A stretch of DNA of 44,837 nucleotides, counting the filler, from Asterias rubens (lineage: Eukaryota): the NCBI RefSeq assembly GCF_902459465.1. It is 2 parts of 2 records of this genome, joined end to end, with 100 filler letters (N's around TTAATTAATTAA, not from the genome) between each part and the next. Parts side by side here need not be neighbours in the genome. Positions count along the whole stretch, not along the records: positions 1 to 25,019 come from NC_047065.1; 1 more part is not named here. One strand, written 5' to 3'. The position numbers and the translations under genes were made by a program. Below, piece after piece: positions 6,735 through 21,064 of the stretch. How positions within the stretch are numbered: the stretch's first letter is position 1; each line of letters opens with the position of its first letter. Below the pieces are notes generated by a model. It was not told the DNA's origin. It made no database searches and saw only the letters and a program-made list of their open reading frames with translations.

Positions 6735-7099
6735 TCAGTTATCAGACAGCTTTTTAGTAACGATGACTGCATCCCATTCAACATTGATGATGACTCTACT
6801 CCCGTCTTTCTTTGAGCACTCACTGCTGGCTAGAAGCTCAATCACGTCTTGATACTGTGAGGCGGTTGCCTTCTTTTTAAACTGCGTCACTGCGAGGATG
6901 AATTCAAGCAAGAGTTCCCCGTCTTCAGACGTCTTGTCGAAGCACTGGGTGATATCCACTTCACAGTTTTGGTGACTGTGGGTGTATGGAATGTTACGTT
7001 GGTTGAACGGGCTCTGCAATGAAGCAAGGCCAAAGTACCGCACATCCTGTTTCAAGGAATCAGGAACACTTCTCCAGAGCTTGAACCAACTACTCTCGT
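6735..7099 (-). CDS. HNMT: HNMT-like gene B, exon 3 (last, includes TGA)
   Basis: Acceptor ttcttttgcag|; ESSWFKLW...VDITQCFD...GELLLEF...KKDGSRVIIN matches human SSGWDKLW...MDISDCF...GDLLWDF...KKEGKVLFN; 365 nt. Confidence 0.95.
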
Positions 7100-7499
7100 C
7101 TGCAAAAGAAAATATCAAATTATACCAGGAGAGTTCATCACAACATGTACAACAACAATATAATAATACAAGACATTGCTAGAGTGTAGGATCGTTTCGT
7201 CAATTCATTGTCTGTAATTTGTTTAAAAGGCACTATGGATACTATTGGTAAATTAATTTGCTCTAAATAATTGTTGCCATAAAACCTTACTTGTTAGCGA
7301 TCAATAGAGAGATGTTGATAGCATAAAACATTGTAGAAGAAACGGCTCCCAAAGTAACGTCGTTTTCGGGAAAGAAGTGGTTTTCCACTAAAATATTTTG
7401 AACTTGATTTCAAAACTTCAGAATGAGATTTTGAGTCGGATCGCTATCACCCACGACAGACATTATTTTGTAACGACTTGTCCATAAGTCTAATTTTAC

Positions 7500-7820
7500 C
7501 TGACATGATAATGACAAGCAATTTGCCACCAGGTTCAAGGAGGTCGTACATATACATCAAGGAGCTCTCTACGTCACCAACGTGGTACAGGGAGTGAATA
7601 GCGCTGATGAAATGAAACTTGGTTCCAATTCCGTCAGTATCTCTGTACTGTTCAAGGGTTTGCTGTCGCCAGTCAAACTTTACACCTTGTAGTTCGTGTC
7701 CCTTGGATTGGACCAGTGCTTTGTACTTGTTGATTTGATCTTCGGCAGGTTCAACTACACGGTTCGTGATGATCGGAAATTTCTTCAGGAGTGCGGTCAG
7801 GAATGGATACTCTATCTCCC
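7500..7820 (-). CDS. HNMT: HNMT-like gene B, exon 2 (not in the ORF track)
   Basis: Acceptor ttctctataaag|, donor G|GTAAAA; 321 nt, phase 1-1. EIEYPFLTALLKKFPIITNRVVEPAEDQINKYKALV...VKFDWRQQT...KFHFISAIHSLYHVGD...LLEPGGKLLVIIMS matches human VVEPSAEQIAKYKELV and FIHMIQMLYYV. Confidence 0.95.
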
Positions 7821-8551
7821 CTTTATAGAGAACAGTTCAATTAGTTGAAGTTAAGAATAATTATTGAGGGGATTGATAAATATACAGGTTCGTAACTTCA
7901 GGCTGTTAATAAAAGTGTGCTCTAATTAAGTTCGAGCTTAAAACAGCTCAACTTTAAAGCCTTTTTTCCTGATTAATATACTTTTTACTGGTGTGTTGTT
8001 AACAAATAAATTGCTAGCATTGCCTTGCTCGTTCCCGCCCTGCCCAGTTTTCACCATTTTCAAAGCTCAAACATGTCAATCTCCTGCTTATTATATCTGA
8101 ACTTGTTTACCATTATTCCCCTACTCGGACTTAATACGTTAAACTCAAAAGTCATTGTTTCTACAAAAGCTTTCTTTCCCTTTTTCACATGGCCACTGAT
8201 CATTTTCTTACGCCGCCACCATTACTATATAATTTTTTACAGTATTCCATGTGCATAATCGCCAGACTAGTATTTTACACTGTTTTAAGTCGCTGTTAAA
8301 AACTCTCTTTTTTTAAGCTGCTTATTTTTGTAATTATGCTTTTAATTTTGTATCTTTCACTCGCTGTGTTATTATTTATTATTTGTTGTTCTCTTTGTGC
8401 GCACAAGGGGGCTTTTTTTGCATTAGGAGCTTTACACATGTCTTCATTTTGTTGTTATTATTAAGTTATTGGATTTGAAAATTCATATGCTCAGAATTGT
8501 AAATCATATTTCTGTATTGCAGCAAAATGATTATTTGAAACACTGCCTTAC

Positions 8552-8741
8552 CAGATCCACTGCCTACTCCTAAGACACGGAGCTCATTGTCTTGGTCCAA
8601 GTTTGGGAGATGAGGGACGATCTTGTCGAGTAGCACTGTCTTGCTCCAAGTGTCCTGCCGTTCATACTTGTTTGAAGATGCAATGAAAGCCTCATACGAC
8701 TTCATATAGCGATCTTCGTAATGTAACTTAGATTCAGCCAT
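8552..8741 (-). CDS. HNMT: HNMT-like gene B, exon 1; full CDS join(8552-8741, 7500-7820, 6735-7099) = 291 aa, intact
   Basis: ATG at 8741 (MAESKLHYEDRY...VLGVGSGSG), donor G|GTAAGG; 190+321+365 = 876 nt in one frame; human HNMT is 292 aa. Confidence 0.95.
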
Positions 8742-9890
8742 TTTGATCTGTCGTTTTCTCTCGCCGTCTGAAGAAGCACTGCCTGCCAACACAAAAACAC
8801 CCGATGAATAAAAGTAGTCTCACACGAGACAGTAACGTACAGGCAGGTCCGCAGGCAAACTCCATTGCTCATTATTGATTCATATTTCAGTTTTCTCATT
8901 ATAGTTTCATGTGACTTAGTTACTGCTACCTTCGGTTCGGTATCCGAAACGTGACCGAAACGGTGCTTTACGACCACCAAAACACACCCAACCGCAACCT
9001 CGTCCCCATGGTTTACTTTGTTTTCAACCATGTTTACAATAGTAAACCCTGGGATGGAAACTCCTATACTTGGATCCTGATTGGACAACTATTTTACATT
9101 ACTTGATCGTGTCCGCCCGGACGCTGCTGCATAATGCAATGTGTCCGCGGTGACACATTTTCATATGCACTTGTGTCCGCCCCCGTGTAAAACCGTCCTT
9201 GCAGTAAATTAAACGCCATTGGTCGACGGAACACGTTCTCCTTTTTTTACAAGCTAAATGCAGGTCATGAAATTTTCGGCTGCATATACTGCATATGTAC
9301 GTAGGTCCAGTGCATGCACACTCATTTAAGCGGGCACATACCATGTACAATGTCCACCGGATTGTTTTTGCATAGCCCCGGACACGATTGCATATGCAAA
9401 AGTCGACTGACACCGCTACAACACTGCCACCGCAACGACATATAGACTTCTTCACCCCGAAGTCAAATTTTGTACAGTAACTAGATCATGAACATACTCA
9501 CCTTATATTAAAATATGGTCAAAATAGATCGACTGCAGTGTTTTGCTAAATTTCATGTAAGGGTTGGCTGAAACATCCTGACGACAACAATAGACAAAGC
9601 AATACCTTTGAATGTACATATTATACTCCACTCCAACAAATTGCACAGTGACCAATATTTACCTTCAAAGATTAGGCATAGGCATAATAGTGTAAAACTC
9701 ACGCGCTGGAAGTCAACTGCATAAAATATTCAGATTCAGTCCTTCCCGCGCAGTGCCCATGAACTCGGAGCAAGGTCGTGCCCTCTATTGTCGACTGTTA
9801 ATAAAAACCTACACGGCAGCTAAAGGTTGTATGGCTTCTGAATGGCACCCCTGAACACTATTTACAAAATAGGGACACCGCCAATATATA

Positions 9891-18922: not shown

Positions 18923-19287
18923 TCAGTTATCAGACAGCTTTTTAGTAACGATGACTGCATCCCATTCAACATTGATGATGACTCTACTCCCGTCTTTCTT
19001 TGAGCACTCACTGCTGGCTAGAAGCTCAATCACGTCTTGATACTGTGAGGCGGTTGCCTTCTTTTTAAACTCCGTCACGTGGAGGAGGAATTCAAGCAAG
19101 AGTTCCCCGTCTTCAGACGTCTTGTCGAAGCACTGGGTGATATCCACTTCACAGTTTTGGTAACTGTGGGTGTATGGAATGTTACGTTGGTTGAACGGGC
19201 TCTGCAATGAAGCAAGGCTAAAGTACCGCAGATCCTTTTTCAAGGAATCAGGAACACTTCTCCAGAGCTTGAACCAACCACACTCGT
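18923..19287 (-). CDS. HNMT: HNMT-like gene C, exon 3 (last)
   Basis: Acceptor ttctttttcag|; 365 nt; paralog of 6735-7099 with 9 amino-acid changes. Confidence 0.95.
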
Positions 19288-19687
19288 CTGAAAAAGAAAA
19301 TATCACATTATACCAAGAGAGTTCATCACAACATGTACAACAACAATACAATGATACAAGACATTGCTAGAGTGTAGGATCGTTTCGTCAATTCATTGTC
19401 TGCAATTTGTTTAAAAGGCACTATGGATACTATTGGTAAATTAAATTGCTCTAAATAATTGTTGCCATAAAACCTTACTTGTTAGCGATCAATAGAGAGA
19501 TGTTGATAGTATAAAACATTGTAGAAGAAACGGCTCTCAAAGTAACGTCGTTTTCGGGAAAGAAGTGGTTTTCCACTAAAATATTTTGAACTTGATTTCA
19601 AGACTTCAGAATGAGATTTTGAGTCGGATCGCTATCACCCACGACAGACATTATTTCATAACGACTTATCCATAAGTCTAATTTTAC

Positions 19688-20008
19688 CTGACATGATAAT
19701 GACAAGCAATTTGCCACCAGGTTCAAGGAGGTCGTACATATACATCAAGGAGCTCTCTACGTCACCAACGTGGTACAGGGAGTGAATAGCGCTGATGAAA
19801 TGAAACTTGGTTCCAACTCCGTCAGTATCTCTGTGTTGTTCAAGGGTTTGCTGTCGCCAGTCAAACTTTACACCTTGTAGTTCGTGTCCCTTGGATTGGA
19901 CCAGTGCTCTGTACTTGATGATTTGATCTTCGGCAGGTTCAACTACACGGTTCGTGATGATCGGATATTTCTTCAGGAGTGCGGTCAGGAATGGATACTC
20001 TATCTCCC
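19688..20008 (-). CDS. HNMT: HNMT-like gene C, exon 2
   Basis: 321 nt, same splice sites as gene B exon 2, open frame, 5 amino-acid changes. Confidence 0.95.
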
Positions 20009-20874
20009 CTTTATAGAGAACAGTTCAATTAGTTGAAGTTAAGAATAATTATTGAGGGGATTGATAAGTATACTGGTACGTAACTTCAGGCTGTTTATAA
20101 AAGTGTGCTCTAATTAAGTTCGAGCTTAAAACAGCTCAACTTTAAAGCCTTTTTTCCTGATTAATATACTTTTTACTGGTGTGTTGTTAACAAATAAATT
20201 GCTAGCATTGCCTTGCTCGTTCCCGCCCTGCCCAGTTTTCACCATTTTCAAAGCTCAAACATGTCAATCTCCTGCTTATTATATCTGAACTTGTTTACCA
20301 TTATTCCCCTACTCGGACTTAAAACGTTAAACTCAAAAGTCATTGTTTCTACAAAAGCTTTCTTTCCCTTTTTCACGTGGCCACTGATCATTTTCTTACG
20401 CCGCCACCATTACTATATAATTTTTTACAGTATTCCATGTGCATAATCGCCAGACTAGTATTTTACACTGTTTTAAGTCGCTGTTAAAAACTCTCTTTTT
20501 TTAAGCTGCTTTTTTTTGTAATTATGCTTTTAATTTTGTATCTTTCACCCGCTGTGTTATTATTTATTATTTGTTGTTCTCTTTGTGCGCATAAGGGGGC
20601 TTTTTTTGCATTAGGCGCTTTACACATGTCTTCTTTTTGTTGTTATTATTAAGTTATTGGATTTGAAAATTCATATGCTCAGAATTGTAAATCATATTTC
20701 TGTATTCCAGCAAAATGATTATTTGAAACACTGCCTTACCAGATCCACTGCTATAATCATATTAAAAATGAAAAATAAACTGTCCAGTTTTAATCTATCT
20801 AGGCTTTGATATTCATAAGTTCAATTTGTTATTAAGACTGTTATTGTAGCGAATGATTTGAAACACTGCCTCAC

Positions 20875-21064
20875 CAGATCCACTGCCTGCTCCTAAGACA
20901 CGGAGCTCATTGTCTTGGTCCAAGTTTGGGAGATGAGGGACGATCTTGTCGAGTAGCACTGTCTTGGTCCAAGTGTCCTGCCGTTCATACTTGTTTGAAG
21001 ATGCAATGAAAGCCTCATACGACTTCATATAGCGATCTTCGTAATGTAACTTAGATTCAGCCAT
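20875..21064 (-). CDS. HNMT: HNMT-like gene C, exon 1; full CDS join(20875-21064, 19688-20008, 18923-19287) = 291 aa, intact
   Basis: ATG at 21064; donor G|GTGAGG at 20874; 190 nt; motif I reads VLGAGSGSG. Confidence 0.93.

What the first reader, a model, noticed from the sequence alone, without database searches (positions are those of the whole stretch)
6735..21064. Paralogs B and C differ almost only by amino-acid changes clustered at pocket positions
Seen (hand count): 19 nucleotide differences in 876 nt give 16 amino-acid changes and only one clearly silent change (CAG/CAA); one codon differs at all three bases (GCA Ala / CAC His). Eight changes fall next to HNMT pocket residues: S177C and S178G beside W179; Q~192K, V196L and G200S around C196/Y198; I244L, A246H and Q249E around F243/E246 (human numbering). 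Introns differ by about 2% (~25 in ~1130 nt), the same as the CDS, so no purifying selection is visible, yet both ORFs and all splice sites are intact. With ~25% silent sites expected, 1-2 silent of 19 has a binomial probability of about 0.03-0.11, so this is suggestive only. Inference: positive selection for different substrates.
Basis: partly seen in the sequence, partly recalled or inferred. Interest (0 to 1): 0.72.

Follow-up and report, generated by a model that had tools for sequence, protein, structure and literature searches.

The report
Young methyltransferase gene pair, constraint lost
Two neighbouring, nearly identical copies of a histamine-methyltransferase-like enzyme gene in a marine eukaryote are both intact and transcribed, and they differ almost only by amino-acid changes, but those changes accumulated at the same rate as in the introns, so adaptation to new substrates is possible but not shown.

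Summary
B (8741-6735, minus strand) and C (21064-18923, minus strand) are three-exon, 291-codon HNMT-family genes. They differ at 19 of 876 nt: 16 residues, one silent site, and one codon changed at all three bases. Spliced RNA confirms both introns and shows B-type and C-type transcripts.

A related species (organism D) serves as outgroup. It assigns 9 replacements plus 1 silent change to B, and 8 replacements with no silent change to C. The triple codon is CAA changed at 2 nt in B and at 1 nt in C.

This pair departs from the family norm. Other paralog pairs have omega of mostly 0.15-0.5, and the D branch has 3 replacements to 4 silent changes (Fisher p=0.012-0.017 against B+C).

Omega above 1 is only marginal (ML omega 5.4, LRT p=0.044; Fisher p=0.17; simulation p=0.02-0.08). 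dN (2.6%) equals intron divergence (2.2%; p=0.63). Clustering near pocket positions holds within exon 3 (8 of 9, p about 0.002). It is not significant over the whole protein once the family's own variability is allowed for (p=0.08-0.14).

My best reading is relaxed constraint in a very young tandem duplicate, possibly with some adaptive pocket changes. Positive selection remains unproven.

The parts
8552..8741 (-). Gene B exon 1 (ATG at 8741; ends in phase 1 before a GT donor)
   Evidence: exon 1-exon 2 joint 7819/20 to 8551/2 seen in RNA
7500..7820 (-). Gene B exon 2: class I SAM-methyltransferase core
   Evidence: Pfam PF13489, 28.6 bits against a cutoff of 27; spliced joints at both ends
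6735..7099 (-). Gene B exon 3: HNMT-type substrate-side domain with stop codon; carries 11 of the 19 nt differences
   Evidence: joint 7099 to 7500 in four runs; B-type spliced contig in run X25
20875..21064 (-). Gene C exon 1
   Evidence: C-type contig of run X18 joins exon 1 to exon 2
19688..20008 (-). Gene C exon 2
18923..19287 (-). Gene C exon 3 with stop codon
   Evidence: the run X18 contig carries the C states at the 10 exon-3 sites tabulated, and its count of 12 differences is met if the untabulated site 7094 is also C-type
6161..10370 (.). Duplicated unit holding B (gene, about 0.57 kb downstream, about 1.6 kb upstream)
   Evidence: Self-BLAST; substitution divergence from the C unit 2.2% in the gene, 2.6% in near flanks, 4.1% far upstream
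18377..22844 (.). Duplicated unit holding C
20740..20874 (-). C-specific 135 nt at the 5' end of intron 1, ending in a second copy of the last 12 nt of exon 1 plus a donor; its first ~110 nt are homologous to intron 1 of paralog A
   Evidence: also present in metagenome contig L023 and in a run X18 contig (loose end at 8563)
13846..18377 (+). Non-LTR retrotransposon (RVT_1 and zf-RVT ORFs, poly-A tail at 18353-18377) inserted about 545 nt downstream of C's stop; it marks the break in B/C similarity
   Evidence: similarity resumes beyond it (13533-13845 vs 5844-6158)
421..625 (-). Exon 1 of paralog A (the rest of that gene lies left of the window)

Best explanation
B and C are two intact, transcribed tandem copies of a three-exon gene. 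The gene encodes a cytosolic SAM-dependent small-molecule N-methyltransferase of the HNMT family; the substrate is unknown and probably not histamine. Their gene regions are 2.2% apart. Since they separated, both copies have taken amino-acid replacements at about the neutral (intron) rate: 9 in B and 8 in C, with a single silent change. The purifying selection that governs the rest of the family (omega about 0.25) has therefore lapsed in both. The most likely cause is relaxed constraint through redundancy in a very young duplicate pair. In exon 3 the replacements fall in the pocket-lining segments, which are the least constrained part of the protein across the family. Some of these changes may shift substrate preference, but selection for that is not demonstrated. 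Shown: gene structure, counts, polarity, expression, the rate comparisons. Inferred: the cause (relaxation) and any functional effect.
For: Counts and models. Family membership: human HNMT, E=1.7e-31 over residues 10-278; PF13489. Neutral benchmark: introns 25/1131, near flanks 2.6%; dN 0.026 vs introns, odds ratio 1.19, p=0.63. This also holds locally: the 5' part has 1.6% and the 3' part 3.1% divergence, and my arithmetic from the counts puts exon dN at about 1.8% and 3.75% there. The family norm is omega 0.15-0.5 in most exon-by-exon comparisons of other paralog pairs, including the younger pairs P20/P21 and P18/P22; the exception is exon 1 of P18/P22 at 0.89. Outgroup organism D (raw RNA reads X22 and contigs X17) polarises the changes 9+1 and 8+0. 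Its own branch has 4 silent and 3 replacement changes, Fisher p=0.012-0.017 against B+C. Replacements do not avoid conserved positions: 4 of 16 fall at sites invariant in six paralogs against 6.2 expected, p=0.18. Intact ORFs after 17-19 random hits are not improbable (P=0.35-0.45). Established knowledge, not tested here: Lynch and Conery (2000) reported that very young duplicates have omega near 1.
Against: The shortage of silent changes is nominally significant against omega=1 in some tests (LRT p=0.044, or 0.041 without codon 240; simulation 0.02-0.08). In exon 3, 8 of 9 replaced positions lie within 3 residues of positions that line the human histamine pocket (p about 0.001-0.002 even when weighted by family variability). 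Each of the three small clusters (173/174, 188-194, 238-243) received hits from both lineages, including a double hit at the E246-equivalent codon. Both copies are still expressed and spliced. B-type and C-type transcripts dominate in different runs (X25 vs X18), which could mean they are regulated differently.
Confidence: 0.52

Rival explanations
1. Positive (diversifying) selection drives B and C apart at the substrate pocket: both copies are acquiring different substrate preferences.
For: Pairwise ML omega 5.4, LRT p=0.044. 17 replacement events against 1 silent, versus 3 against 4 on the outgroup branch. Exon-3 replacements cluster next to pocket positions (p about 0.002), with independent hits from both lineages in the same three segments and a double hit at the E246-equivalent codon (polarity). 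V190L sits at the C196 equivalent, a histamine-contact residue that is also replaced in chicken HNMT-like, the carnosine N-methyltransferase (PMC3660329). Both copies are expressed.
Against: dN does not exceed the intron or flank rate. Other tests give p=0.07-0.17. None of the 7 replacements in exons 1-2 is near a pocket position, and several hit residues conserved from these paralogs to human (K97, Y122, G174). Whole-protein clustering is not significant after weighting (p=0.08-0.14). The pocket-near segments are hypervariable in every paralog comparison, as low constraint would also predict. At least three B changes (F78, I128 and the silent one) are absent from another individual's B-type transcript (X25), so they are polymorphic rather than fixed. 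The pair was picked out by a scan, so there is a multiple-testing burden. Closeness to the pocket was measured along the sequence only, not in 3-D.
Confidence: 0.3
2. B and C are not fixed paralogs in every individual. They are two divergent haplotypes or a copy-number polymorphism, or a haplotypic duplication left in the assembly, so the differences are allelic.
For: Run X25 shows only B-type exon 3 and run X18 only C-type, both labelled organism A. Metagenome contig L023 is a clean mosaic of B and C states with at least 8 switches and only 3 private differences, and ORF P0083 is B-type at 173-213 and C-type at 238-243, as recombining alleles would give. Organism D shows a single type at all 19 sites.
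Against: Both copies lie inside one contig with no gap. They are separated by about 8 kb that includes a copy-specific LINE. Flanking collinear blocks are 4-12% diverged, which is high for alleles. The genome holds exactly two copies and no alternative haplotig. Logan and metagenome contigs drop minor variants and resolve each bubble independently, which produces exactly such single-type and mosaic contigs. Recent tandem or inverted pairs are normal in this family (P20/P21).
Confidence: 0.1
3. The clustered differences were imported by gene conversion from older paralogs (A, P19, P20 and others).
For: Conversion clearly operates in this family. The 3' half of exon 1 is nearly identical in A, B and C. 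Exon 2 has dS 0.2-0.4 between paralogs whose exon 3 has dS 1.0-1.3. Four C-derived states (C173, L190, L238, H240) also occur in some paralog.
Against: Exon 3 of every other paralog is 41-57% identical in protein with saturated dS. Any tract would therefore carry many silent and neighbouring differences, yet the B/C changes are isolated single-nucleotide changes with no silent change in exon 3. Most derived states (A59, R97, H122, S174, G194, A240, Q243, N94, F78) occur in no paralog.
Confidence: 0.03

Closest known systems
Human histamine N-methyltransferase (HNMT; PDB 1JQD, 2AOT and related entries)
   Same: Full-length homology (E=1.7e-31, residues 10-278 vs 13-284). Same length (291 vs 292 aa). 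GxGxG SAM motif. Conserved equivalents of Y15, F22, Y146, W179, W183, D193, Y198 and F243.
   Different: About half of the histamine-pocket residues listed for 2AOV (PMC9867436) are replaced: F19Y, E28K, Q143H, Y147H, V173M, C196V/L, Q197R, E246A/H, N283V. Histamine is therefore unlikely to be the preferred substrate. This gene belongs to a family of at least 8 close paralogs in this genome.
Chicken HNMT-like, the carnosine N-methyltransferase (PMC3660329)
   Same: A neighbouring duplicate of HNMT that took on a new imidazole substrate, with replacements at histamine-contact positions Tyr147 and Cys196. B and C also differ from HNMT at both positions and from each other at the Cys196 equivalent.
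   Different: The chicken pair is old (49% identity) and its new activity was shown biochemically. B and C are 94.5% identical and no activity is known.
Young gene duplicates with relaxed selection (the pattern Lynch and Conery described in 2000; from established knowledge, not tested here)
   Same: A very small silent distance (dS about 0.01) with omega at or above 1 in both copies, while older pairs of the same family show omega 0.15-0.5.
   Different: Here the replacements in exon 3 concentrate in pocket-lining segments, and both copies are shown to be transcribed.
HNMT-like expansions in sea stars (Patiria miniata, Acanthaster planci)
   Same: These are the nearest annotated full-length relatives found (38% identity on exon 3). 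They are also present as many paralogs per genome.
   Different: A distant lineage. No close annotated orthologue of B/C was found in the two protein collections, within their limits: a 120-aa exon query and a length filter on candidates.

Membership tests
HNMT family (class I SAM-dependent small-molecule N-methyltransferases with the HNMT substrate domain) | Significant full-length sequence similarity to HNMT | tested here: met
   phmmer vs PDB: 1jqd_A E=1.7e-31, query 10-278 vs chain 13-284
HNMT family (class I SAM-dependent small-molecule N-methyltransferases with the HNMT substrate domain) | Class I methyltransferase core with a glycine-rich SAM motif | tested here: met
   Exon 2 hits PF13489 at 28.6 bits (cutoff 27); the motif VLG(V/A)GSGSGE spans the exon 1/2 junction
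HNMT family (class I SAM-dependent small-molecule N-methyltransferases with the HNMT substrate domain) | HNMT two-domain fold | not tested
Histamine-specific HNMT orthologue | Conservation of the histamine-contact residues (E28, Q143, Y147, C196, E246, N283 and others; list from PMC9867436 and PMC3660329) | tested here: not met
   By the alignment these are K25, H139, H143, V/L190, A/H240 and V277; only Y12, F19, Y142, W175, W179, D189, Y192 and F237 are kept
Histamine-specific HNMT orthologue | Histamine N-tele-methylation activity | not testable with these tools
   Needs an enzyme assay
Paralog pair under positive selection | dN/dS significantly above 1 | tested here: inconclusive
   NG86 omega 3.1, Fisher p=0.17, binomial 0.07-0.10; GY94 omega 5.4, LRT p=0.044; simulation 0.02-0.08
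Paralog pair under positive selection | Replacement rate above the local neutral (intron/flank) rate | tested here: not met
   dN 0.026 vs introns 0.022, odds ratio 1.19, p=0.63; vs all non-coding, odds ratio 0.88, p=0.71
Paralog pair under positive selection | Replacements concentrated at functional (pocket) sites beyond what general variability predicts | tested here: inconclusive
   Whole protein p=0.03 unweighted and 0.08-0.14 weighted; exon 3 alone p about 0.002; sequence proximity only, no 3-D test
Paralog pair under positive selection | Both copies expressed | tested here: met
   Spliced B-type contig in X25 and spliced C-type contigs in X18
Paralog pair under positive selection | Excess of fixed over polymorphic replacements (MK test) | not testable with these tools
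   Only a few other haplotypes were seen; F78, I128 and the silent change are absent from X25's B-type transcript, so some differences are polymorphic

The most novel reading that the evidence does not exclude
Both copies of a duplicate only about 2% old are being remodelled in parallel by selection on the same three pocket-lining segments (173-174, 188-194, 238-243). This includes independent hits on the codon equivalent to human Glu246. Gene conversion keeps the SAM-binding exon uniform across the whole family. If so, this would be enzyme neofunctionalisation caught while some of the changes are still polymorphic.
Probability: 0.25. Interest if true: 0.55.

Novelty: new member of a known kind. 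Interest (0 to 1): 0.35.

Why it matters
If the pocket changes are adaptive, this pair would be a small, tractable system for seeing which few residues retune substrate choice in HNMT-type methyltransferases: 17 replacements, a known ancestral state, and both genes expressed. The only characterised precedent for a substrate shift in this family is the much older chicken carnosine methyltransferase. If the changes reflect relaxation only, the pair is an ordinary example of the early, unconstrained phase after tandem duplication. The exon-specific concerted evolution seen across the family may be the more general point: exon 2 is homogenised while exon 3 diverges freely.

Tried and rejected
1. 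Gene conversion from older paralogs as the source of the clustered changes is rejected: the changes are isolated, no silent differences were co-transferred, and most derived states occur in no paralog.

2. Three independent substitutions, or one triple event, in codon 240 is rejected. Organism D has CAA there, so B changed 2 adjacent nt and C changed 1 nt.

3. The search for close orthologues failed. The representative search and word-index searches gave only 3 close ORF fragments and distant sea-star proteins, so no multi-species codon test was possible.

4. The JGI metagenome pattern scan for codons 233-248 in any of the B, C or D forms found nothing.

5. The contig carrying P0083 could not be fetched.

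6. The Horton 2001 and 2005 HNMT structure papers are not held. The pocket list was taken from PMC9867436.

8. The protein atlas gave only generic methyltransferase clusters and no taxon.

9. No structure prediction or 3-D mapping was done, because the spliced protein has no reference. The full protein was typed once, and I did not repeat that.

10. The organism was not identified. The DNA occurs in marine metagenomes and in runs under five species labels.
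Full report
**What is there**

The piece holds a roughly 4.2-kb segment present twice in direct orientation: 6161-10370 and 18377-22844. Each copy carries a three-exon gene on the minus strand.
- B: exons 8741-8552, 7820-7500 and 7099-6735.
- C: exons 21064-20875, 20008-19688 and 19287-18923.
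- All introns are GT..AG, both introns are in phase 1, and each CDS is 876 nt including the stop.

The 291-aa product is a clear homologue of human histamine N-methyltransferase (1jqd, E=1.7e-31 over residues 10-278). Exon 2 is the class I SAM-methyltransferase core (PF13489 above its cutoff). Exon 3 has no Pfam family and corresponds to the HNMT substrate-side domain.

About half of the residues that line the histamine pocket in the human structure are replaced. The pocket list comes from PMC9867436; Tyr147 and Cys196 as amine contacts come from PMC3660329. The replacements are E28K, Q143H, Y147H, C196V/L, E246A/H and N283V. W179, W183, D193, Y198 and F243 are kept. These are therefore HNMT-family enzymes, but probably not histamine-specific ones.

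The window is G000:C4:11694982-11720056 in a 417.6-Mb genome. That genome has at least six further close paralogs with the same exon structure. Exon 1 of one of them (A) lies at window 421-625.

**Checking the observation**

The human numbering is right.

The introns have 25 substitutions in 1131 aligned nt. C's intron 1 has 135 extra nt at its 5' end (20740-20874), ending in a second copy of the last 12 nt of exon 1 plus a donor. RNA shows that C uses the first donor.

**Expression and polarity**

Reads and contigs of four public runs were laid on 6400-9000. They gave spliced joints exactly at both predicted introns.
- Run X25 (organism A) has a spliced contig that is B-type at all 11 exon-3 sites.
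- Run X18 (organism A) has spliced contigs carrying the C state at the 10 exon-3 sites that were tabulated. Their count of 12 differences is met if the untabulated site 7094 is also C-type. X18 also carries C's intron-1 insertion.
- So both copy types are transcribed and processed.

Organism D (raw RNA reads X22 and contigs X17) shows a single type. It shares four silent differences against both B and C, so it behaves as an outgroup. Its states are T33, V59, Y78, I94, K97, CAA121, Y122, V128, S173, G174, Q188, V190, S194, Y213, I238, CAA240 (Gln) and E243.

This polarises the changes as follows:
- B gained T33S, Y78F, I94N, V128I, G174S, S194G, Y213H, Q240A (two adjacent nt) and E243Q, plus the one silent change.
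- C gained V59A, K97R, Y122H, S173C, Q188K, V190L, I238L and Q240H, with no silent change.

The six paralogs agree with this polarity at 12 of the 16 sites. They disagree at 190, 213 and 238, and site 173 is the least secure. X25's B-type transcript has Y78, V128 and CAA121, so three of the window's B changes are polymorphic.

**Is it more than neutral?**
- NG86 gives S=183, N=690, dS=0.008, dN=0.026 and omega=3.1. Fisher p=0.17; binomial p=0.07-0.10.
- A pairwise GY94 likelihood gives omega 5.4, with an LRT against omega=1 of p=0.044, or 0.041 without codon 240.
- Dropping 17-19 random hits on the inferred ancestor gives one or fewer silent changes with P=0.02-0.08. The ORF stays intact with P=0.35-0.45.
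- Against the non-coding benchmark there is no excess. dN is 0.026 and introns are 0.022 (odds ratio 1.19, p=0.63). Near flanks are 0.026.
- Divergence is uneven: 1.6% in the 5' part and 3.1% in the 3' part (p=0.028). By my arithmetic from the counts, exon dN is close to the intron rate in each part.

What is robust is the loss of constraint. Other paralog pairs have omega 0.15-0.5 in most exon comparisons, including the younger pairs P20/P21 and P18/P22; the exception is exon 1 of P18/P22 at 0.89. The D branch has 3 replacements to 4 silent changes, against 15-17 to 1 on the B and C branches (p=0.012-0.017).

**Clustering at the pocket**

Two of the 16 variable sites sit on pocket positions: 190 is the equivalent of C196, and 240 the equivalent of E246. 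The expectation is 0.9 (p=0.22). The C196 equivalence depends on where a 2-residue gap is placed in the alignment.

Eight of 16 sites lie within 3 residues of a pocket position (p=0.026 unweighted). These segments are the most variable part of exon 3 in every paralog comparison: 2.59 vs 1.87 states per site, p=3e-5. Weighting by that variability gives p=0.08-0.14 for the whole protein. For exon 3 alone it is still about 0.002 (8 of 9).

None of the 7 changes in exons 1-2 is near a pocket position. Four of 16 hit positions invariant in all six paralogs (K97, Y122, G174, S194), against 6.2 expected (p=0.18). Proximity was measured along the sequence only, and no 3-D test was possible.

In favour of selection, each of the three exon-3 clusters received hits from both lineages.

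**Other explanations examined**

*Conversion from old paralogs.* This is excluded for exon 3. A conversion tract from a paralog with dS above 1 would bring many silent changes, and none is seen. Most derived states exist in no paralog.

*Conversion or recombination between B and C.* This is plausible.
- Divergence rises from 2.2% in the gene to 4-12% in the outer collinear blocks.
- A metagenome contig (L023) is a clean B/C mosaic with only three private differences.
- ORF P0083 is B-type at 173-213 and C-type at 238-243.
- However, assemblers that resolve each bubble independently produce such mosaics too.

*Alleles or a false duplication.* This is fed by X25 showing only B-type and X18 only C-type. 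Against it:
- Both copies lie in one gapless contig.
- A copy-specific LINE (13846-18377; RVT_1, zf-RVT, poly-A tail) sits behind C.
- The flanks are too diverged for alleles.
- The assembly holds exactly two copies.

**Verdict**

The data fit neutral accumulation of replacements in two redundant, still-functional young copies at least as well as they fit positive selection. The exon-3 clustering, the parallel hits and the possibly different expression keep adaptive divergence alive as a candidate at roughly 25-30%.

This is a new member of a known kind, a young tandem duplicate with omega of 1 or more. Its interest is moderate. It mainly offers a compact test case for substrate retuning in HNMT-type enzymes, for which chicken HNMT-like/carnosine N-methyltransferase is the only characterised precedent (PMC3660329).

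Noticed in passing
Exon 2 of all paralogs (window 7500-7820, 19688-20008; L017-L022): Exon-specific concerted evolution. Between old paralogs, exon 2 has dS 0.2-0.4 and 87-92% nt identity, whereas exon 3 of the same gene pairs has dS 1.0-1.3. The SAM-binding exon appears to be homogenised by gene conversion while the substrate-side exon diverges.
   Followed up: partly
window 421-560, 8552-8680, 20875-21003: The 3' half of exon 1 is nearly identical in A, B and C, although A's 5' half and its exon 3 are far more diverged. This is another conversion tract or a very strongly conserved stretch.
   Followed up: partly
window 20740-20874: C's intron 1 starts with 135 nt that B lacks. The first ~110 nt are about 80% like the start of A's intron 1. 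The stretch ends with a repeat of exon 1's last 12 nt plus a GTAAGG donor. B looks like a deletion between the two 31-nt direct repeats, or C like a misaligned conversion from an A-like copy.
   Followed up: partly
window 13846-18377 (+): A non-LTR retrotransposon with an ORF1-like 249-aa frame, an RVT_1 frame of 525 aa, a zf-RVT frame and a poly-A tail. The frames are split, so it is probably decayed. It is inserted about 545 nt downstream of gene C.
   Followed up: partly
window 8058-8470 (intron 1 of B) and 20246-20658 (C): A repeat of about 400 nt with more than 35 copies at about 77% identity across the genome. It draws very high read depth in all runs.
   Followed up: no
window 24142-24655: A tandem array of a 37-nt unit, about 14 copies at 80-92% identity.
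   Followed up: no
window 2348-2780: A 433-nt stretch that matches its own reverse complement at 86% (a palindromic element). Smaller palindromes lie at 5337-5447 and 13636-13742.
   Followed up: no
L017 (paralog A, G000:C4:11688000-11696000): Relative to B, paralog A lacks 9 residues in the pocket-lining segment (B 184-192). The missing stretch includes the equivalents of human D193, C196, Q197 and Y198. The ORF is otherwise intact, so its pocket must be very different.
   Followed up: no
window 6551-6603 (3' UTR of B): RNA reads and an X25 contig show an 'opposite strands' joint here, and the region matches 13619-13741 in inverted orientation. This is probably a foldback or MITE-like element in the 3' UTR.
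   Followed up: no
window 8551, loose ends in X22 and X17: Some exon-1 reads continue into a different exon 2, one that starts with the residues EVEFPF as in paralogs A and P21. Those paralogs are therefore expressed too, and they share the exon-1 3' half with B.
   Followed up: no
L020/L021 (G000:C4, about 21.71 and 21.73 Mb): Another young pair of this family, in inverted orientation about 17 kb apart, with 13 aa differences and omega 0.27-0.5. It shows ordinary purifying selection, in contrast to B/C.
   Followed up: partly
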